From the NCBI GenBank assembly GCA_965153285.1, contig OZ229119.1: DNA of 64,000 nucleotides; one strand, written 5' to 3'. The notes beneath the pieces were generated by a model. The model saw only the letters and a program-made list of their open reading frames with translations. It was not told the origin of the DNA and did not search any database. The translations under genes were made by a program, and so were the position numbers. Below are positions 6,672 through 59,264 of this stretch, in pieces (position 1 is the first letter of the stretch; every line of letters begins with the position of its first letter). This DNA is from Podarcis tiliguerta. Taxonomy: Eukaryota.

Positions 6672-9057
6672 GGACTCAGCACATATTTGGATGAAATATT
6701 ATTGAAAGAGGTTCAACTTTCAACACTCTACTACAAGCGCAACCTAAAAGGTCCTGCAGATGTATAAAAACACCAAAACCAGAAATAGCATGGCAATGCA
6801 TACTAGTTGAATCAGTAGCACTGCTCCCCATATCATGACGTTAAAAATGTTTGTTTCACATAATATCAACTTGGCATCGTGGAGAATGAAAAACATTTAT
6901 GCCACTGAACTTGGTCCCACTCATACCTGAAAGTAACTTTTTTTGCAAATGTTATGGAGTACCTGCATTTTTTAAAAAAAAGTTTTGGAAAATGAATCCT
7001 GTATAATAATAAATCACTGGGTTTTTATTGACAAGCAGGATGATGTAACAAAACTTTGTGAAGTGCTGTAAATTTCTAGAAAAGCAATTTTACATATACC
7101 CCCAAAGCACAAAAAAATTCTCAGTATGACAGAAGCTGCTGAAAATTACCTTGCTTATCTCGTCTAATAAATTCTGCCTGTTCACTACATAATAGAGTTG
7201 TGTGTTTTTGTTTTTGTTGTTTAAACTGGTCACATCCATAAAACATCTGCTCATCACCAGTCAGAAAGTGAAGTTCAGGAATCCTAGCAAAGTCAGATTC
7301 TATTTTAAATATGATTGCTTAATTTTCTAGCAAAACATTTCTTACCCTTCTAAAAACCGGATGGTTCTTAATTATTTAAATGAATGAGTAAATATACAGA
7401 AATCCACTGTTGACCTTTTGTATCTTAAATAGGTCTACCTATTAATTAGTAAAAATGTCCTCAAAATGAATCTATTCTTCGTATGTTGAAACCAGGTAAT
7501 AGATTTTGAAAAACATCCGGCACGAACCCTTAAACAAAACTTTATCTGTGGTGGTGGTGGTTGAGGTTGAGGGGAGTCACAGGACTATAAAGTCATATCC
7601 TCAGATTTATGACTTTTGCACCAGGTACACTGAAATACTTAGCTGTTAACTTGACTCAAAGGGCCTTCTGCAAGGCTTTTGTGCTTGAACACTAAGTATG
7701 GATGGTCTTAGCCTAATTACATGCATTTCAGCTTCAATACTGTTCAATCATAGCTTCATTCCATCCTGTTTTAGTGGATGCTTTTTTTAGTGTGCACAAA
7801 AGTCCACATTTAATTGTATTTTGTGCACCATTGTTATATAAAATACGCACTTTTTAAAAACAAACAAACCACAAGGTACGCTTTTTGTTTAAAAATGACT
7901 CTTTAATCATTCTAGTATGAGACAGGGACAGAACTTGTGATTTCAGATGGTCAAAGCATAAACTTGGCAAATAACAGATCTATTCCATTGTAATTTTACT
8001 ATCAAGTTCTATAAGGTTGCATCTAGAGCACAGCTTCTTCCATGCCTGTTTAACAGTGGTAGTACTATAACAAATAGAAGAGCAATAGCCTAGGATTTTG
8101 CTAGAAAGATCACTCTTTTGAACTGTGCTCATTACACTGATCATTCTCTAGCCGAGACTGCTACATGAACGAGTGCTCTTGACACTTGGAAAACCCTTGG
8201 TCTGGGAACACCTTAAGAAGTGATGCTGCACACTACAATTACATTAGGAGCAGGCTACAGGTGGTGTGAGGAATACCACATGCTTCTCTACAGGTAGTCC
8301 AATTTCACTAGCATGTACAGCTATGCTTTTTTAACAGCACATATAAATGGTGACTGATGCTACAGGATCTTGAATCTTTTGTTCAGTGACTATGGTCCAC
8401 ATTTGCCATGCCTTTCCTGTTTTTCCCCTGTTGCATGGCTATTTGCTGAAAATTAGAGCAATAAATTCATGCAAATGAAATGCATAACTTAGAACAAAAC
8501 ACTTGCAAGTCTCATCAAGTTCAGTGTTGGAGGGTATGGATACTACCTAAACAGTGTCATTTGAGGGATAACACATTCCTCCGCCTGGTCTGAATTCCTG
8601 GTGTAACATTATAGCAGCATGCACTTTTCTACTCTATCCTATGCTCTGTCTGAAGTGAGGGCAACTCATTTCCCCTGCAGGGAAGTACAGAAGTTTCAAA
8701 TGAAAGAGGAGCTTGCATCATTCTCCGTTCAAATATTTCGCAGGAAGCACAAACAGAAACACTTCCCTTGCCCTTTCAACACACTGGCCTTAATCTGGAG
8801 AAAATTAATTGCCCTTAAATCTCACGGAAATCATTCAGACTGAAGTTAATGATGATTAACTATATCCCACTGATTTAAAATGAGCTTCGGCGTGCCCATT
8901 CCCCCCCCCCCCCGATGGAGATCTGTATGCAATATTCAAATGCACTAAATGCCCATCTAGTCCAGCATCCTGTGGCCAAGGAGGTGCTTATGGGAGGCTT
9001 TCAAGCAGGACCTGAGTGCTGTGCAACATCACTCTCCCCACTTAAGATTCCCAGTAA

Positions 9058-9408
9058 AAAGGTAAAGGGACCCCTGACCATTAGGTCCAGTCATGACTGA
9101 CTCTGGGGTTGCGGCGCTCATCTTGCTTTATTGGCCAAGGCAGCTGGCATACAGCTTCCGGGTCATGTGGCCAGCATGACTAAGCCGCTTCTGGAGAACC
9201 AGAGCAGCGCACAGAAACACCATTTACCTTCCCGCCAGAATGGTACCTATTTATCTACTTGCACTTTGACATGCTTTTGAACTGCTAGGTTGGCAGGAGC
9301 TGGGACCGAGCAACAGGAGCTCACCCTGTCGCGGGGATTCGAACTGCCAACCTTCTGATCGGCAAGTCCTAGGCTTTGTGGTTTAACCCACAGCGCTACC
9401 CGCATCCC
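9058..9408 (-). mobile_element. Sauria SINE, full length
   Basis: Minus strand starts gggatgcgggtagcgctgtgggttaaacc, has B-box gttcgaatcc and ends in an accttt tail; 14-bp TSD aagattcccagtaa at 9044-9057 and 9413-9426. Confidence 0.95.
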
Positions 9409-9669
9409 TTGAAAGATTCCCAGTAATTCCCAGCAATTAGTGGAGGTAGAACACCGTCATCATGGCTAGGATTCAGTCATAACCTTCTCCTCTTTCCATT
9501 TGTCTTACCTTCTTTGGAAGCCATCCAAGCTGATGGCCACCACAACTTTATTCTCTGTAGTGTTCTTTGCTCAGACTTCCCTTAAATTGTAGGTCTTGTT
9601 CCACTTTTTTCTTTCTGCAGCAACACAATTATAATAACCAAGTGACAGAAGTAGAGCGGAAGGGGGCTT

Positions 9670-9723
9670 GCATGCCATCAAGTCCACAGCATCCCCACAA
9701 TCCACTAAAACAGTTAATCCAGT

Positions 9724-9757
<34 letters not shown>

Positions 9758-9830
9758 CAATTTCTCTGGGAGCATTTATCCCTGACAAATCCACACCGGC
9801 TTCTACTCATCAATATGTTGCTAATGAATA
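9670..9830 (-). mobile_element. Old CR1 RT fragment interrupted by (AG)n
   Basis: Translation SRSRCGFVRDKCSQRNCIS...LVDCGDAVDL resembles the CR1 RT stretch SQHGF.KNKSCQTNLISF...LVD.GNAVD; (AG)n at about 9727-9755. Confidence 0.6.
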
Positions 9831-9917
9831 CTTTTAAAAGCCCACCAGGATGGGAGGCAGTGGTTTCAGTGGAGATCTTGGGGTCTTTACAAGGCCCCGG
9901 TGGTAAAGGTGGTTCTG

Positions 9918-11198
9918 TTAAATTGCGAACCACCTGAAAGAGTCTCCTGCTACTATTTTCTGCAGATGCAATAGAGGCGAAGTCTTCTTCGCCGTCGCTA
10001 TCGCCACTTGGTAGGCTCGACGTTGAGCTCTAACCTGTGTCCGGTCAGATTCGGAGTGAGTTTTCTGCCACCGACGCTCTAACCGTCTCAACGATTGTTT
10101 CATCGCCCTCAGCTCCGAAGAAAACCACGGGGCTGTTCGGGCTCCATGCAATCGGAGAGGGCGCTTCAGAGCCAGACAGTCGATAGCCCTGGTTAACTCC
10201 GCATTCCAGCGGGCCACCAGGGAATCAGCTGAAAGGCCATCAACATGGGCTAAAGCATCCCCTACCACTCTCTGGAAACCATTTGGATCCATTAAGTGCC
10301 GGGGGCGGACCATCCGAATTGGTCCCACCTCCCTGCAGAGGGGAAGGGTCGCGGAGAAGTCCAGTTGCACCAGGAAGTGATCTGACCATGGCACTTCTTT
10401 TGTTTCACTTTTACTTAGTGTCAGATCACCCACGTCACTAGAGGTGAACACCAGGTCTAAGGCATGTCCATGACTATGAGTTGGGCCAAACTTATTCAGG
10501 GACAGCCCCATGGAGGCCATGCTTTCCACGAAGTCCCGAGCAGCCCCTTGTAAGGTCGTGTCGGCATGGATGTTAAAATCCCCTAGGACAACCAAACTAG
10601 GTGTCTCCAGGAGAAAATCCGCCACGACCTGAAGCAGCTCGGACAGGGAATCCTTGGTGCAGCGGGGAGGTCGGTACACCAAAAGGAATCCTGTACTGCC
10701 CCTATTGCCCAACTTCCAGAACATGCACTCAGAGAGCTGGATCTTCCCAGTAGGACGCCTGGTGCAAGCTAGTGACTTCCTAAAAATCACTGCAACCCCC
10801 CCTCCCCGCCCACATGACCTGGGTTGCTGTGCGTAAGAGAAACCTGGTGGGCAAGCAGCGGCAAGGACAGGCCCATCTGCTTCCTCCAGCCAGGTCTCCG
10901 TCACACATGCCAGGTCAAATCCTCCATCCACAATCAAGTCGTGGATGGCAGTGGTTTTATTCATCATTGACCTGGCATTGCACAGCAACACTTTCAGGTC
11001 ATGTGGGTTTCCCCTGTTGATTCCAGTATCCATCCGGTCAAGGCCAGACCCGGAGGCAGGGATAGTCCTCAGACAACGACTAAACCTGCCTCCTCGGTAA
11101 TGACATGGTCTGGTCTTAGCGTAACTCCGCCTCCTGCCCATGATCACCGAGATCGGATGTCCCAGTGCTTTCCCCCCTGTGAAACTTGTCCCAGCCAT
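9918..11198 (-). CDS. L2 ORF2 N-terminal apurinic-like endonuclease (truncated, no RT)
   Basis: First ATG at 11198 in ATAATGG context. Catalytic motifs CNARS, VTETW, VYRPP, LGDFN, LDLVF and WSDH are all present. A small frameshift near 9980 ends homology in this frame; homology continues in another frame (ASIASAENSSRRLFQVVRNLTEPP). Confidence 0.85.
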   Translation of the reverse strand: MAGTSFTGGKALGHPISVIMGRRRSYAKTRPCHYRGGRFSRCLRTIPASGSGLDRMDTGINRGNPHDLKVLLCNARSMMNKTTAIHDLIVDGGFDLACVTETWLEEADGPVLAAACPPGFSYAQQPRSCGRGGGVAVIFRKSLACTRRPTGKIQLSECMFWKLGNRGSTGFLLVYRPPRCTKDSLSELLQVVADFLLETPSLVVLGDFNIHADTTLQGAARDFVESMASMGLSLNKFGPTHSHGHALDLVFTSSDVGDLTLSKSETKEVPWSDHFLVQLDFSATLPLCREVGPIRMVRPRHLMDPNGFQRVVGDALAHVDGLSADSLVARWNAELTRAIDCLALKRPLRLHGARTAPWFSSELRAMKQSLRRLERRWQKTHSESDRTQVRAQRRAYQVAIATAKKTSPLLHLQKIVAGDSFRWFAI

Positions 11199-11496
11199 TA
11201 TGTTGGCTGGGGAGCCACTCCCAGGCAGCCCTGATCCCACCCCTTAAAAACAAAACACAAACTATACAGAACCAATAAAACAACAACAAAAGGAATAGAA
11301 CAATTGTACTAAAATTAATCCCCAACCAACTATCCATCCCACCCACCCACCCCCAACAAAGGAAAAAAGAAAAAAAGGAATAAAAACCTAAATTGCCACC
11401 GACTGCTTGAGGACATTTTAAAGCACAATGACCACCTGGAACAGGGAAGCAATGGCAGAACACTTCCCACACTTCCCCAAAAGTTTGTTCCAGATA

Positions 11497-11833
11497 AGGG
11501 CCTGGGCCACGCCCCCTGGGCCAGTTGGAAAAGGCCCTGGAAGGGAGCAGGCCCTGCAGTCCTCACCCAGCCGATGGTCCGAGGCCTCACTGCAGCAGGA
11601 GTCCCTTTATAGCCGGGAGAGAGGGCCTGGGCCACGCCCCCTGGGCCAGTTGGAGAAGGCCCTGGAAGGGAGCAGGCCCTGCAGTCCTCACCCAGCCGAT
11701 GGTCCGAGGCTTTCCTGCAGCAGGAGTCCCTTTATAGCCGGGAGAGAGGGCCTGGGCCACGCCCCCTGGGCCAGTTGGAGAAGGCCCTGGAAGGGAGCAG
11801 GCCCTGCAGTCCTCACCCAGCCGATGGTCCGAG
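11497..11833 (-). promoter_or_regulatory. Tandem 125-bp monomer array (2.7 copies) at the L2 5' end, with GC-boxes and TATA boxes
   Basis: Near-identical units start at 11497, 11622 and 11747. Minus-strand GGGGCGTGG at 11515-11507, 11640-11632 and 11765-11757; TATAAA at 11611-11606 and 11736-11731. Confidence 0.8.
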
Positions 11834-13194
11834 CCCTAAACGGCCTCGGCCCAGTATACCTGAAGGAGCGTCTCCACCCCCATCGTTCTGCCCGGACACT
11901 GAGGTCCAGCTCCGAGGGCCTCCTGGCGGTTCCCTCATTGCGAGAAGTAAAGCTACAGGGAACCAGGCAGAGGGCCTTCTCGGTAGTGGCGCCCGCCCTG
12001 TGGAACGCCCTCCCAGCAGATGTCAAAGCGATAAATAACTACCTGACATTCAGAAGACATCTTAAGGCAGTCCTGTTCAGGGAAGTTTTTAATCTGTGAT
12101 ATTTTATTGTATTTTTTGTTTCTATGGAAGCCGCCCAGAGTGGCTGGGGAAACCCAGCCAGATGGGCGGGGTACAAATAATAAATTATTATTATTATTAT
12201 TATAAATTGAGGTCTGCAAATGGTACCCGGTCCTTAGTCTATGGGATCAAGGGCTCTATTCATCTTGATCCTGCTTGCGAGCATTCTAACAGGTGTTCTC
12301 ACTTTTGTAAGCGCCCCTGTCAGAATAGCTTACAATGTCCCTTCTAGAGGCTTGCTTTTCAAAATGAAAGCTGAGCATTCAGGGACATGGGGCTGAAATA
12401 TCCCTGAGAGGGTAATTCTCATCAAAATTTCATCTAGTTTGTGTGCCAAAAAAATAAACAAATCTGCGTGTGAAAGATCCAGAAAAGGGAAGGTATTTTT
12501 TAAGACACTGCTGAAAGTGTGTGAAAACCTGTGAGTAATTTCATCTCAGCGTTACTACTGAGGGAAAGGGAAATATGTCTGAGCTGCTCACAGCCCCAGG
12601 AGGAAAAGGAATGTGCTGAGAAATTACACTATGCCCACAGTTTATGTTTGGATTTAAGAACTTTTCTCTGGCACCCAATAAAGCATTGACATAACCACAG
12701 CGCCTATAATCAAAAGCCGCTTTGGAGATCTTTTGATTGAAAGGTAGTGGACATAAACCTTTCCAATGTATAAATAAATCACACCCATTCGGTTTGAGAA
12801 GTGACCTGGATGGATGTTTATAACCTCACGCTTTGCTTCCTCTATTCCACCATGAATACTTCAGTTTCAGGGTTGCTTCTGTAACTGTAGGAAGGCTTGA
12901 AGGAGTGGTGTAAAGGGATCAGAGCTCAGCAGATGGTAAAGAGATAAAGTCAGTAGAAACTACACAGAGATTGTCTCCACAGGTAACATATTGCCTCTCA
13001 TTACTGCTACTCCTTTTCCTGGAGATTCTGGAGAAGAAAATTGGTTGAGGAAATGGGCTACATCCAACTGCTATCAAAGCCAGGAAGTGGCCTAATTATG
13101 TAAATTCTGAGTATGTGCAACTGCATCCTTTTTCCAGTTCCCGGGAAAGGTTCGGATATTAAGACAAGTTCTCGTAATGAATACTCAGCTTGAA

Positions 13195-18289: not shown

Positions 18290-18700
18290 TGGGAAAATCA
18301 GAGCATTTGCTAGGCATTTACCTCATACAATTTCCCACCTTGTCATAAGAAATGGAAGGAGGCAGAAGTCTCCTTGGAATATCTTAAAGATTGATTCGCT
18401 CTGTTTGTACCAGGGAATGAAGTTTACTATGTATCCTGGATTCAAGGTGTTTAGGAATTGAAACGTCAACAACAAAACCGCGAATTTGACACAGTAGCTA
18501 ATAGGCTTCCAGTGATAATACTTCAATACCAACGTAACGTCTGTAATGCTGGTCAACCCATAAGGCATTCCAGAGGCTACATTTTGCACTTAGCTGCATC
18601 TTCTGAACCAGGTGCAGTACGTAAATATTTAAAATTCACACAGGTGCAGTAAATCTGGGTGGCAGTGCCCAGCCATGGGAGTAACCTGGAGAGGTGGCGG
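18290..18700 (-). mobile_element. Degraded L2 ORF2 C-terminal fragment
   Basis: QNVASG...DVTLVLKYYHWKPISYCVKFAVLLLTF resembles L2 QNAAAR...HITPVL..LHWLPI..R..FKVLLLTF. Confidence 0.65.
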
Positions 18701-28698: not shown

Positions 28699-29495
28699 AG
28701 TCTTAAGAGTCTCCTCCAGCACCATAATCCAAAAGCATCAGTCCTTCGGCGATCAGCCTTCTTTATGGTCCAGCTCTCACTTCCATATATCATTACTGGG
28801 AAAATCATAGCTTTAACTATACAGACCTTTGTTGGCAAGGAAATGTCTCTGCTTTTTAAGATGCTGTCTAGGTTTGTCATTGCTTTTCTCCCAAGAAGCA
28901 GGCGTCTTTTAATTTCATGGCTGCTGTCACCATCTGCAGTGATCATGGAGCCCAAGAAAGTAAAATCTCTCACTGCCTCGATTTCTTCCCCTTCTATTTG
29001 CCAGGAGGTGATTGGACCAGTGGCCATCATCTTTGTTTTTTTGTTGCTGAGCTTCAAACCATATTTTGCGCTCTCCTCTTTCACCCTCATTAAAAGGTTC
29101 TTTAATTCCTCCTCACTTTCTGCCATCAAGGTTGTGTCATCTGCATAACTGAGGTTGTTGATATTTCTTCCAGCAATCTTAATTCTGGCTAGGGATTCAT
29201 CCAGTGCAGCCTTTCGCATGATGAATTTTGCATATAAGTTAAATAAGCAGGGAGACAATATACAGCCTTGCCGTACTCCTTTCCCAATTTTGAACCAGTC
29301 AGTTGTTCCATATCCAGTTCTAACTGTAGCTTCTTGTCCCACATAGAGATTTCTCAGGAGACAGATGAGGTGATCAGGCACTCCCATTTCTTTAAGAACT
29401 TGCCATAGTTTGCTGTGGTCGACATAGTCAAAGGCTTTTGCATAGTCAATGAAGCAGAAGTAGATGTCTTTCTGGAACTCTCTAGCTTTCTCCAT
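28699..29495 (-). mobile_element. BovB (RTE-clade LINE) reverse transcriptase fragment
   Basis: Open frame with FIDYAKAFD, GVRQGCILSP, YADD and DFTFLGS; truncated at both ends. Confidence 0.95.
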
Positions 29496-33575: not shown

Positions 33576-33742
33576 AAATAAAAGCTACAAACATGAATCT
33601 GACCAAACTGCGGGTGGCAGAAATAAAAGCTACAGACATGAATCTGACCAAACTGCGGGTGGCAGTGGAAGACAGAAGTGCCTGGCGTGCTCTGGTCCAT
33701 GGGGTCACGAAGAGTCGGACACGACTGAACGACTAAACAACA
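33576..33742 (+). mobile_element. 5'-truncated BovB 3' end with a 45-bp tandem duplication at its 5' junction
   Basis: BovB terminus ggtccatggggtcacgaagagtcggacacgactgaacgactaaacaac; units 33576-33620 and 33621-33665 differ by one base. Confidence 0.9.
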
Positions 33743-33784
33743 TTAGAAATAAAGTTATGTTCCTTTCCTATTTCATGGTTTCAG

Positions 33785-34550
33785 TTGTCTCTATACTAAT
33801 GCCCATAGCATGCAAAACAAGCAAGAGAAGTTTAAGCTCTTAATACAGGATGACAAATATTACCCAGCGGCTATTACTGAAACCTGGGCACTCATGGCTG
33901 GAATGTAGAAATTGGGGGGTATAACACATTAAAAAGGAATAGACAAAACAGGAAAAGAGGAGGAGTAGCATTATATGAAAAGGATGTGTACTGTCAGGCA
34001 TCAGGGAATCTGACCCCCCCCCCCCACGGTAGGCTGCCAGTGTCTCTTACCAATGTCTTTTACCATTGTCTTTTATTCAGTATTCACAGAGAGAGGCTTA
34101 GAAATGAAGCCTCTTAGAGTAATGGTGTTGCTCCAAGTAATCTCCACCCCCTTTCTCTCCTCAATTGCCAACCGCACCACCCACCTTATGGTGGCGCTTA
34201 GGGCCATTTGTCTCTGAGCCCTTTGCTCGCCTACTTTCAATGCTTGGGAGAAGGGGGCCCTGGAATGCTTTCTAGTGGTAACATGTCAGCCAGCTGCTCC
34301 GGTTCTGCCTCCCACCCCTCCTCTCCGATAATTTCCCAACTTTGCCCCTCATCTACCTCTGAGCTGTGACTTCCCACAAACCACTGTTGAACATCTATAC
34401 TGTCTTCCTCTTCTCCGGAAGGTTCAGGCTGGGGAGGCGGCCTCCATCATTCCTCCTCTGTCCAGTGCCTGACATGTACGCTTGTGAACCCTGATCTGGA
34501 GCATGGAAGGAAGACTGAGAGCACATGGGTGAAAAATGTAGGAGAGGGAA
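33785..34550 (+). mobile_element. Degraded CR1 endonuclease region split by a solo LTR
   Basis: Translates roughly to LYTNA.S..NKQE...ITETW...RKRGGVALY.KDVY, then resumes after the LTR as ...TESTWVK. Confidence 0.7.
33992..34474 (-). mobile_element. Solo LTR (483 bp)
   Basis: TGTCAGGCA...TGCCTGACA termini; perfect 5-bp TSD tgtac at 33987-33991 and 34475-34479; AATAAA on the minus strand near 34072. Confidence 0.88.
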
Positions 34551-57214: not shown

Positions 57215-57960
57215 ACCATATCTATATATTTTATTGCACCCTTCCACTACCAATGTACCACCCAGAGCAGCTTACAAATATACTGAAAACACAAAATATA
57301 TTTATTTTTAAAAGAAGTGTCAGAAAAATACATACTGTACACATTTTAGAAGCAGCTATAGGAAACATCACAGTTAAAAATTACCTTTACAAAGGCCCTG
57401 CCACTTGTCCCTACTCTACATGGGGCACAGATAAGGGTTTCGCCTTCTGATCTGCAGGAACAGGCAGGATGATATGTGACTAAACATTCCCTTAGGTATC
57501 CTGGATCCAAGACATTTAGGACCTTAAAGGTAAACACCAACTTTTTTGGTGCTCAGAAGCAAATTGGCAGCTGGTGCAGAACAGGTATAACGTGATCCTA
57601 TGACCCATTAATATGTTAGTTCCTGTGTTGGACCAACTGCATATTCTTTAAAGGCAGCCCCATGTCAAATGAAGTACAGTAATCCAATCTTGATATAACC
57701 AAGGCATTGTTGCCATAGTCAGGTATGACTTCCTCAGGAATGGGCACAACTAGCATGCCATCCTAAGCTGAGCAGAGGCACTGCTGCCACCTGGCCATCT
57801 AGATGTAAAGCTGTATCTAGGAGGACACCTGAATTGTGAGCCAGATTTTGCAACGGGAATACAATCTCCCCCAAAACAGGCTGAGTCCCTGTTCCAGAGT
57901 TTGACCCTCTCCTAATCAGGAACACATCTCTCTTGACTGGATTGAGCTTCAGTTTGTTAG
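57215..57960 (-). mobile_element. Degraded L2 3' fragment
   Basis: VFTFKVLNVLDPGYLRECL and KLKLNP-like motifs on the minus strand. Confidence 0.7.
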
Positions 57961-59264
57961 TCTACATTACCACTTCTGTGTTCAGAATCCCCAATGGCAT
58001 ATGATTGCACTGTTAAGTATTTTGGTTGATACAGGTGACAAAGTGGGATTCTCAAAATTAGAACACCATTGTTAGCAGTTTGCACAATTCACACACTGAA
58101 TAATGTGGTCGATCCATGGGCGCAAATGACAATACATTGACATGCTGCAGTCAGCTGTGCCCAGATGTTTGTTTAAAAAGCTGACGGCAGAAAAATAGAA
58201 AAGTTTCAGTAATTGTACTATAATAAATTATTCCATCCTAATTCTCATTTTGTAATCATTAAAGTCTAATGAGAACCTATCAAGAGAATCAAAAAGGACA
58301 GTATATCACGGATGCTAGAAAATGTGATTTCAATAACACCCTTGAGTATGTAAGTGTTAGGCAAGAAAAATGCCACTTTTTGATTTATTGGAAAGCTTTG
58401 CTTTGCTAAGTGCCTAATATTGCATTTATTATAACGTATGTCCTGTCACGCATTATTGATTAAATTAAAAGTTCATCATAAATTAAATATAATATTTTAA
58501 GAAACAAATTGAACAATTAGTTTGTTTCTATTTATTGTCAATAGCAGCTGGTGCAAAATGGCATGGATCTCAAGCGCACAAACAAAAACATCAGGCCAGT
58601 TCTATCTTTTTATTCATTACTCACATCATGCCACACATAAGAAGAGGCGACCAAGGGGGAATTTCATCATGCAAACAACATCATTGCATTTGGGAACGGA
58701 GCAGAAGATTTCTAAACCCACCGACATTATTTTATTGTAGAAGGTAGTAGATTGTCAATGAAATGTATAAAAGCAAGTCCCAGTCTGTATTAATGAATGG
58801 CTCCTTAGAAAATTGCCAAATGGGAGCCAAAAGAAGGTAAAGTAAGCATGTTAACTCTAAGGCTGCAGTCCTATAATCTCCCAGGGGGCACAGGGTTGCA
58901 TCCAATCCTATTCCTACTCGGAGTAGACCCAATGAAATGAAGTCTAACATCAATCCATTAATTTCAACAGGTCTGCTCTGCCTATAACTTAGTTGGATAC
59001 AACCAATAGAATACTTTGGACCTCCTTCTCCAAGGATGTCCTGACTTCTTATGCCTCCTCCATGAAGCTGTGGCAAGGTCTGCAGATGGTGCCTCTCCAG
59101 TACTGGAATAGCAGTGTTGGTGAGAACGTGGGGAAGAGCTGTCCTGCAATCATGTTGGAAGAGATTGTGGATCCGCATGGGCCAAAGCCCTTTGATTTCC
59201 CCAAAACACACACAGAGAGAATTAAGCTAGCCCTAGAGCTGGTGTATTTATTTCCCTCCCGTTG

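What the first reader, a model, noticed from the sequence alone, without database searches (positions are those of the whole stretch)
11497..11833. L2 LINE with a tandem TATA-box monomer promoter; the element starts at the predicted transcription start
Seen: the 5' end of this L2 is 2.7 copies of a 125-bp monomer. On the element strand a GC/KLF box (GGGGCGTGG) lies about 21 bp upstream of TATAAA. The outermost monomer is cut at 11831-11833, equivalent to 11706-11708 in the middle unit, which is 29-31 nt downstream of the first T of that unit's TATA (11736). Established: Pol II initiates about 30 nt after TATA; non-LTR elements usually rely on internal TATA-less promoters, and mouse L1 uses tandem monomers. 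Inference: the parent RNA was started by a further upstream monomer. Each retrotransposition would then lose one TATA while downstream monomers keep the copy active, with tandem duplication renewing the array. I do not know of this being described for L2.
Basis: partly seen in the sequence, partly recalled or inferred. Interest (0 to 1): 0.78.

Follow-up and report, generated by a model that had tools for sequence, protein, structure and literature searches.

The report
Lizard-type L2 LINE with TATA monomer array
The 5' end of an L2-type jumping gene carries a short tandem array of 125-bp units, each with a GC box and a TATA box, and the copy begins about where an upstream unit's TATA box would start transcription, but this rests on one copy that is joined to another L2 piece and no transcription start was seen.

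Summary
A 125-bp unit repeats 2.7 times at 11497-11837 with 97% identity. On the minus strand the array reads A(87)-B(38)-A-B-A. Each A carries GGGGCGTGG and each B carries TATAAA 20 nt further on.

The array sits upstream of a 298-nt non-repeated tether and an ORF with an APE endonuclease. The first retained base (11833-11831) lies 28-30 nt after where an upstream TATA would stand.

- The "start" is not a junction with host DNA. It is a head-to-head junction, with a 2-nt overlap, to a 5'-truncated plus-strand L2 3' end. The reverse transcriptase (RT) half is missing, so the structure looks like twin priming or template switching. The scan noted this separately (s1-827971).
- No other copy could be read, and RNA reads gave no start site (table 6: none).

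Word depth in DNA runs of two organism labels shows that the monomer, including the B-to-A joins, is a repeated feature of the family. Another note (s1-827683, untested) reports an L2 headed by GC-box monomers elsewhere in this genome.

Verdict: the anatomy is real. The promoter-ratchet reading is plausible (about 0.45), parallels mouse L1 monomers (PMC6454616), and remains untested. It would be a new variant of a known kind and is of moderate interest.

The parts
11747..11833 (-). Outermost unit, part A only (87 nt). Its first base is the 5' end of the L2 piece. It carries a GC box at 11765-11757.
11709..11746 (-). Part B (38 nt) with TATAAA at 11736-11731. Three of the 4 differences between units lie in its last 6 nt.
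11622..11708 (-). Second A (87 nt), GC box at 11640-11632. It starts 28 nt after T11736, which is the predicted start site of the first TATA.
11584..11621 (-). Second B (38 nt) with TATAAA at 11611-11606.
11497..11583 (-). Third, innermost A (87 nt), GC box at 11515-11507. It runs straight into the tether and no TATA follows it.
11199..11496 (-). Non-repeated, T-rich 'tether' of the 5'UTR (298 nt, 42.6% GC, 1 CpG). It shows no similarity to B.
9918..11198 (-). Single L2 ORF from the first ATG (11198) to a stop at 9920-9918. The APE endonuclease domain is at about 10979-10425. Homology to relatives holds to about 9981.
9883..9999 (-). Continuation of the L2 ORF in another frame (frameshift). 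The last recognisable L2 residues are near 9883. There is no RT domain beyond it.
11832..11833 (.). Two-base overlap (microhomology) at the head-to-head junction between the inverted L2 5' piece and the direct L2 3' piece.
   Evidence: table 7
11834..12099 (+). 5'-truncated C-terminal end of an L2 ORF2 (stop 12097-12099), 43% identical to the last 85 residues of full-length relative P0036. It is 50-100 times more abundant in reads than the 5' piece.
12131..12169 (+). 3'UTR hairpin. The 104-nt stretch folds at -37.7 kcal/mol, z -4.77, and 0 of 200 shuffles folded as well.
12184..12203 (+). (ATT)6.7 microsatellite tail that ends the plus-strand L2 piece.

Best explanation
This is the 5' part (about 1.95 kb) of a young L2-clade LINE on the minus strand. 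It has a 635-nt 5'UTR made of a monomer array (A-BA-BA, 337 nt) and a 298-nt tether, followed by the start of a single ORF with an APE endonuclease. It is joined head-to-head, through a 2-nt overlap, to a 370-bp plus-strand L2 3' end with ORF2 tail, hairpin and (ATT)n. The most likely origin is one reverse-transcription event, either twin priming or a template switch, so that 11833-11831 marks the 3' end of a cDNA (inferred). Each B-A join forms a compact upstream-type Pol II promoter: GC box, 20 nt, TATAAA, then the next A starting 28 nt after the first T. I infer that RNA starts at the first bases of an A unit. A transcript therefore carries only the units downstream of the TATA that fired. 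This copy, with 2 TATAs, came from a parent with at least 3. Arrays shrink at each round and must be re-extended by duplication, as proposed for mouse L1 monomers. Shown: the anatomy, the motif geometry, and that the monomer is repeated in the family in two organism labels. Inferred: promoter activity, the start site, the ratchet, and the single-event origin.
For: - Array and motifs.
- TATAAA in the sense orientation in 0.11% of 200000 shuffles of a 68% GC unit, and first base 28-30 nt after the T.
- Array ends in phase with the tether, and the outermost unit lacks exactly B.
- Endonuclease ORF with 9512 relatives at E<=1e-3. Full-length relatives P0036 and P0041 match both the endonuclease piece and the plus-strand tail.
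- No plus-strand L2 sequence left of 9883, so the 3' piece is truncated exactly at the junction.
- All 4 runs show other copies of the 3' piece continuing as ORF2 upstream of 11832 (table 7).
- Monomer bins, including both B-to-A joins, have word depth 62k-278k in X1 against 25k-45k for the tether and 145k-243k for the endonuclease. In X7 the figures are 0.5k-4.2k against 0.2k-1.5k and 10k-21k (table 2).
- 20 runs under 7 organism labels hold 33-78% of the words.
Against: - This is one copy only, and its 5' end is an inversion junction, not a host flank with a target-site duplication.
- The chance that a random cut falls in a 3-nt slot of a 125-nt unit is 2.4%, or about 6-9% for a looser -26 to -35 window. 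That is my arithmetic, done after the fact.
- RNA runs X23 and X24 show 8 reads or fewer per strand on the array, none on most of the tether, and no pile-up of starts (tables 2 and 6). RNA depth roughly follows DNA abundance.
- CpG o/e is 0.28, unlike CpG-rich L1 monomers.
- The first retained bases are C, T, C, where Pol II usually starts at a purine. There is no YYANWYY on the minus strand in 11400-11900.
- Twin priming normally leaves the two segments nearly contiguous. Here the whole RT region is missing, and no target-site duplication was found (one search found only a 7-mer that lies inside L2 coding sequence).
Confidence: 0.45

Rival explanations
1. Coincidence of the breakpoint. The inverted L2 cDNA stopped, or the DNA later broke, at an arbitrary place in the array and was joined through AG microhomology. 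The array may still be a promoter, but this copy's end says nothing about the start site.
For: The end is an inversion junction with 2-nt microhomology. This is typical of joins at truncated cDNA ends (PMC2912911, passages read: microhomology at inversion junctions resembles that at 5'-truncated junctions). LINE cDNAs are often incomplete: depth falls about 5-fold from the endonuclease to the tether in X1. The first bases are pyrimidines.
Against: The chance of landing in the 3-nt slot is about 2.4% (my arithmetic). The outermost unit lacks exactly B, the TATA-bearing part.
Confidence: 0.3
2. Inert tandem duplication. The 125-bp repeat is a slippage or unequal-exchange product in the 5'UTR with no promoter role. 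The real promoter is internal and lies elsewhere, or the family depends on read-through.
For: No TSS or enriched sense RNA over the array. CpG-poor. No Inr. The RNA fold of the array is unremarkable (z -1.31).
Against: TATAAA in the sense orientation is rare by chance in this composition (0.11%) and has a GC box at a classical distance. The B-to-A joins are abundant in two organism labels, so the array is inherited through retrotransposition.
Confidence: 0.17
3. Foreign origin. The units belong to a satellite, an LTR or a host promoter that only happens to lie next to this L2 piece.
For: No second copy in the 64-kb window. The direct link of array to tether in other copies was not seen: the one long contig shown reaches only 4 nt into the array (table 8, record 8).
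Against: Monomer depth is of the order of the L2 5' end, not of a major satellite. The array ends exactly in phase on the tether that leads into the L2 ORF. Note s1-827683 reports another L2 headed by GC-box monomers in this genome (untested).
Confidence: 0.05

Closest known systems
Mouse L1 (L1Md A, Gf, Tf) monomeric 5'UTR promoters
   Same: Head-to-tail monomers, then a non-repeated tether, then the ORF. The outermost monomer is truncated, and its truncation site is read as the parent's TSS. Monomer duplication is invoked to offset loss during retrotransposition (PMC6454616, abstract and passages; PMC5381506, passages).
   Different: L2 clade, not L1. Units are 125 bp against about 200 bp. 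Each unit has a canonical TATAAA plus GC box (the term TATA has 0 occurrences in PMC6454616; YY1 and AP-1 sites are discussed there). CpG o/e is 0.28 here. There is a single ORF with no ORF1.
Tandemly duplicated 70-100-bp motifs in L1 5'UTRs of rat, hyrax, horse, elephant and opossum
   Same: Short motifs duplicated 2-3 times at the 5' end of a LINE (PMC5381506, passage in 'Evolution of the 5'UTR').
   Different: All are L1. The same paper states that none of the lizard L1 5'UTRs shows tandem duplication. No TATA geometry is described.
5'-inverted L1 copies made by twin priming
   Same: An inverted 5' segment joined to a direct 3' segment that carries the tail, with microhomology at the inversion junction (PMC2912911, passages).
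   Different: Here the two segments are about 2.5-3 kb apart in element coordinates (my estimate), with the RT missing. No target-site duplication was found, and the element is L2.
Stringent-type L2 LINEs (eel UnaL2, zebrafish ZfL2)
   Same: One or two ORFs. The RT recognises its own 3'UTR (PMC3880073, passage), and that 3' tail carries a stem (PMC1636434, abstract in a search listing). The plus-strand piece has a strong hairpin and a microsatellite tail.
   Different: No Rfam family, including any for such 3' tails, matched 9200-12400. I found no account of their 5'UTRs as monomer arrays.
Drosophila HeT-A telomeric arrays and LTR U3 promoters (recalled, from no call)
   Same: An upstream-type promoter survives because a tandem arrangement puts a promoter copy ahead of the transcribed unit.
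   Different: In HeT-A the promoter lies in the 3' end of the neighbouring element. LTR elements rebuild U3 during reverse transcription. Here the repeat is inside one element's 5'UTR.

Membership tests
L2-clade LINE | APE-type endonuclease at the N-terminus of the main ORF | tested here: met
   PF03372 E 2.6e-15 and PF14529 E 7.2e-09; 9512 relatives at E<=1e-3
L2-clade LINE | Reverse transcriptase domain, and RT-based placement in the L2 clade | tested here: not met
   No RT in this copy: no ORF or tblastn match left of 9981 on the minus strand. The clade cannot be placed by RT, and no labelled references were on hand.
L2-clade LINE | Conserved ORF2 C-terminal tail, 3'UTR hairpin and microsatellite tail | tested here: met
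   The plus-strand piece is 43% identical to the last 85 residues of P0036, which also matches the endonuclease piece. Hairpin z -4.77. (ATT)6.7 tail. That this tail motif marks L2 is recalled, not tested.
L2-clade LINE | Match to a curated RNA family for an L2 3' element | tested here: not met
   0 Rfam matches at E<=1 in 9200-12400
Monomeric LINE promoter (mouse L1 type) | Two or more head-to-tail monomers at the 5' end, followed by a non-repeated tether and the ORF | tested here: met
Monomeric LINE promoter (mouse L1 type) | The array is a feature of the family, with varying unit number among copies | tested here: inconclusive
   Monomer and B-to-A join depth is 2-6 times the tether in X1 and present in X7. 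Unit numbers of other copies were not seen.
Monomeric LINE promoter (mouse L1 type) | Common truncation site of the outermost monomer across copies | not tested
   No other copy was reachable. Loose ends inside the array were crowded out (1154 rows not shown). Searches gave nothing.
Monomeric LINE promoter (mouse L1 type) | Transcription starts inside the monomers | tested here: inconclusive
   table 6: none. Depth on the array was 8 reads or fewer, about 12% of each RNA run was read, and the tissue is unknown.
Monomeric LINE promoter (mouse L1 type) | CpG-rich monomers | tested here: not met
   11 CpG in 337 nt, o/e 0.28
TATA-box Pol II core promoter | TATAAA with a start about 28-33 nt downstream | tested here: inconclusive
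   The motif is present and unlikely by chance. The start is inferred only from this copy's first base.
Twin-priming 5' inversion | Inverted 5' segment plus direct tailed 3' segment, with microhomology at the junction | tested here: met
Twin-priming 5' inversion | Segments nearly contiguous in element coordinates, and a target-site duplication around the whole | tested here: not met
   The RT region is absent. The only shared 7-mer lies inside L2 coding sequence.

The most novel reading that the evidence does not exclude
A squamate L2 lineage has swapped the usual internal, TATA-less LINE promoter for an upstream-type GC-box/TATA promoter. It keeps that promoter heritable only by carrying it as tandem monomers. 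Every transcript starts at the first base of a unit and loses the unit that fired, so the family runs a promoter ratchet. The ratchet has to be reset by monomer re-duplication, possibly by reverse-transcriptase template jumping at the RNA 5' end. The clustering of 3 of the 4 inter-unit differences in the 6 nt just upstream of the unit start would fit that idea. This would be convergent with mouse L1 but use a different core-promoter logic.
Probability: 0.4. Interest if true: 0.6.

Novelty: new variant of a known kind. Interest (0 to 1): 0.45.

Why it matters
How non-LTR elements keep a promoter, when their RNA cannot include sequence upstream of its own start, is an old question. It has been answered mainly for L1 (internal promoter or monomers). 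A TATA-driven monomer array in L2 would show that the monomer solution arose independently in another clade and works with a classical upstream promoter. It makes a sharp, testable prediction: 5' ends and CAGE peaks at one phase of a 125-bp unit, and array length falling by whole units between parent and progeny. It would also scatter compact GC-box/TATA promoters through squamate genomes. If the coincidence is chance, the locus is simply a rearranged L2 fragment with a duplicated 5'UTR.

Tried and rejected
- **Other copies in the window:** none found.
- **Other copies in public collections:** a 21-letter core of the unit gave 3 metagenome stretches and 1 viral stretch. All were 21-27-nt chance matches with no further similarity and were dropped.
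- **Other copies through predicted proteins:** the plus-strand translation of the array (all three frames open) gave 12 word-sharing candidates and 0 hits.
- **B as a diverged copy of the tether start:** rejected. 1734 of 2000 shuffles scored as well.
- **Target-site duplication:** only 7-mers are shared. The one next to the tail lies inside L2 coding sequence.
- **Rfam:** 0 matches. **ARAGORN:** 0 genes in 9000-12500.
- **The 45-bp repeat at 33576-33665 as a second LINE 5' array:** rejected. It lies inside what looks like a different LINE's 3' end.
- **TSS from RNA reads:** no signal.
- **Poor choice of stretch for the one read-laying run:** I included the very abundant plus-strand 3' piece. 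It filled the loose-end table (1154 rows not shown) and hid any loose ends inside the array.
- **Literature:** 8 counted searches. The six aimed at this question listed no paper describing monomer arrays or TATA promoters in L2.
  - Read as passages: PMC5381506, PMC6454616, PMC3880073, PMC2912911.
  - Seen only as an abstract in a listing: PMC1636434.
  - Novick et al. 2009 on Anolis LINEs was not held.
  - I could not see Repbase or Dfam entries, or the supplementary repeat libraries of squamate genome papers. They may already hold an L2 consensus with a repeated 5' end.

Full report
**What is there**

Tandem Repeats Finder gives one array at 11497-11837: period 125, 2.7 copies, 97% matches, no indels, score 647. 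It is the only long-period array of that strength in the 64-kb window. A 32-letter stretch of the unit occurs exactly three times, 125 bp apart, and none of 100 shuffles gave a match.

Read on the minus strand, the array is A(87 nt)-B(38 nt)-A-B-A:
- A occupies 11833-11747, 11708-11622 and 11583-11497.
- B occupies 11746-11709 and 11621-11584.
- Each A carries GGGGCGTGG, starting at 11765, 11640 and 11515.
- Each B carries TATAAA, starting at 11736 and 11611, 20 nt after the GC box.

The innermost A runs straight into a non-repeated, T-rich tether (11496-11199). The tether has no detectable similarity to B: 1734 of 2000 shuffles scored as well. In the phase "BA", therefore, the array ends in register on the tether and the outermost unit lacks exactly B.

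The units differ at 4 positions in 212 aligned. Three of these fall in the last 6 nt of B, just before the start of the next A.

**What it belongs to**

Downstream on the minus strand, the first ATG (11198) opens an ORF that runs to 9918.
- It carries an APE-type endonuclease: PF03372, E 2.6e-15.
- A search of 1.84 billion representatives gave 9512 relatives at E<=1e-3 and 132 at E<=1e-30. The best is 52% identical over residues 8-406.
- After about 9981 the reading frame shifts. L2-like residues continue to about 9883.
- Beyond that there is no reverse transcriptase on that strand.
- There is no ORF1 between the array and this ORF.

Two full-length relatives (P0036, 952 aa; P0041, 1047 aa) match the endonuclease piece at 32-34% identity. 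They also match, at 43% and 33%, the plus-strand stretch immediately to the right of the array.

That stretch, 11834-12099, encodes the C-terminal end of an ORF2. A 3'UTR hairpin follows (z -4.77; 0 of 200 shuffles folded as well), then an (ATT)6.7 tail ending at 12203.

I call both pieces L2-type on this basis. That the tail motif is diagnostic of L2 is my recollection and was not tested. No RT is present to place the clade, and Rfam gave no match.

**The "start" is a junction between two L2 pieces**

In all four runs laid on 10900-12250, hundreds of reads or contigs match from 11832 rightwards. To the left they carry a different sequence, which continues the ORF2 frame (table 7). Other copies of the plus-strand piece therefore run on upstream, and this one is truncated at 11832.

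Monomer identity runs up to 11833, so the two pieces overlap by two bases.

No plus-strand L2 coding sequence lies left of the minus-strand piece. This argues against a simple nested insertion.

The layout is an inverted 5' segment, with the most 5' base at the junction, next to a direct tailed 3' segment, with microhomology at the join. This is the layout of twin priming as described for L1 (PMC2912911, passages). The scan holds a separate note to that effect (s1-827971).

It departs from the classical picture in two ways. The whole RT region, which I estimate at 2.5-3 kb, is missing between the segments. I also found no target-site duplication: the only 7-mer shared with the right flank lies inside L2 coding sequence.

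A template switch of the RT onto the 3' end of a finished cDNA would give the same layout. In either model 11833-11831 is the 3' end of a cDNA. This is inference. It is what allows the position to be read as an RNA 5' end at all.

**Is the geometry more than chance?**

- The unit is 68% GC. TATAAA in the sense orientation arose in 0.11% of 200000 shuffles of the unit, and in 0.32% on either strand.
- The first retained base corresponds to 11708-11706 in the next unit, 28-30 nt after T11736. This is within the range usually given for TATA-directed starts (textbook knowledge).
- A random cut would hit that 3-nt slot in 2.4% of cases, or about 6-9% with a looser window. This is my arithmetic, done after the fact on one copy.

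Three points count against the reading. The first bases are C, T, C, not a purine. No YYANWYY occurs on that strand in 11400-11900. The array is CpG-poor, with o/e 0.28 against 0.23 for the window.

**Is the array a family feature?**

Twenty runs under seven coded organism labels hold 33-78% of the sampled words of 10000-11840. Summed word depths, table 2, are:

| Run | Array bins (including both B-to-A joins) | Tether | Endonuclease |
|---|---|---|---|
| X1 (organism A contigs) | 62k-278k | 25k-45k | 145k-243k |
| X7 (organism C) | 0.5k-4.2k | 0.2k-1.5k | 10k-21k |

The unit is therefore repeated at about the abundance expected for several units per surviving 5' end. It is not a major satellite. 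The B-to-A join is inherited, which argues against a duplication private to this locus.

I could not see how many units other copies have or where they begin. The loose-end table was filled by the plus-strand 3' piece, which is 50-100 times more abundant (1154 rows not shown). That was a poor choice of stretch on my part, and the tool's single call is spent.

Three other routes to further copies failed: pattern scans of metagenome and viral contigs (chance matches only), a protein search with the array's open plus-strand frame (0 hits), and the window itself.

A first-reader note (s1-827683) reports another L2 in this genome headed by GC-box monomers with no ORF1. I could not test it.

**RNA**

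Two RNA runs of organism C were laid, with about 12% of each run read and the tissue unknown.
- Depth on the endonuclease was 7-34 with the first mate on plus and 9-21 with the first mate on minus.
- Depth on most of the tether was 0-3.
- Depth on the array was 0-8 (table 2).
- No place met the criterion for many molecules beginning or ending (table 6: none).

RNA depth roughly tracks DNA abundance and both orientations occur, so this looks like background transcription. It neither supports nor refutes a start in the array.

**Mechanism I think most likely (confidence about 0.45)**

Each GC box-TATA pair drives initiation at the first bases of the following A. A transcript carries only the units downstream of the TATA that fired. 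This copy, with two TATAs, had a parent with at least three. Its own progeny would carry one or none. Arrays must be re-extended by duplication.

This is the same logic published for mouse L1. [quoted passage not shown]

**Rivals**
- The breakpoint is a coincidence (0.30).
- The duplication is inert (0.17).
- The units are foreign to L2 (0.05).

**Novelty**

Tandem motifs in LINE 5'UTRs are described for L1 of mouse, rat, hyrax, horse, elephant and opossum. They are explicitly not found in lizard L1 (PMC5381506, passages). L2 elements are described as having one or two ORFs and an RT specific for their own 3'UTR (PMC3880073, passage).

The six searches aimed at this question listed no paper on monomer arrays or TATA promoters in L2. 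Repbase, Dfam and the closed supplements of squamate genome papers could hold such a consensus, and I could not see them.

If confirmed, this is a new variant of a known kind. As it stands, it is a well-formed hypothesis resting on one rearranged copy.

Noticed in passing
window 11428-12099 (+): A 223-aa ORF runs antisense through the whole array, with all three frames of the unit open on the plus strand, and fuses in frame to the L2 ORF2 tail. A gene caller could mistake it for a protein.
   Followed up: partly
window 33576-33665 (+), context 33590-33740: A 45-bp unit repeated twice (97%). It lies inside an ORF ending in a motif that I recall from BovB/RTE-type LINE 3' ends. A short endonuclease-like fragment follows at 33774-33887.
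   Followed up: partly
window about 9300-9405 (-): By eye, this looks like the tRNA-like head of a SINE just left of the L2 piece. ARAGORN called no tRNA there.
   Followed up: partly
window 18407-18589, 29016-29459, 57382-58006 (all -): Weak tblastn matches (24-37% identity) to the RT or C-terminal parts of full-length L2-type relatives. These are old LINE fragments.
   Followed up: no
window 11460-11477: A 9-bp unit repeated twice inside the tether. One X1 contig joins 11588 to 11460 and skips the innermost A, at under 1% of the tether depth (table 5).
   Followed up: no
window 11832-12187 (+): The L2 3' end is 50-100 times more abundant in DNA and RNA reads than the 5' part. It has many internal-deletion variants in X1 (tables 2 and 5). 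This is as expected for heavy 5' truncation or for a SINE that shares this tail.
   Followed up: no
window 10000-11840: Runs under seven different coded organism labels hold 33-78% of this stretch's sampled words, so near-identical L2 copies exist in several related species.
   Followed up: no
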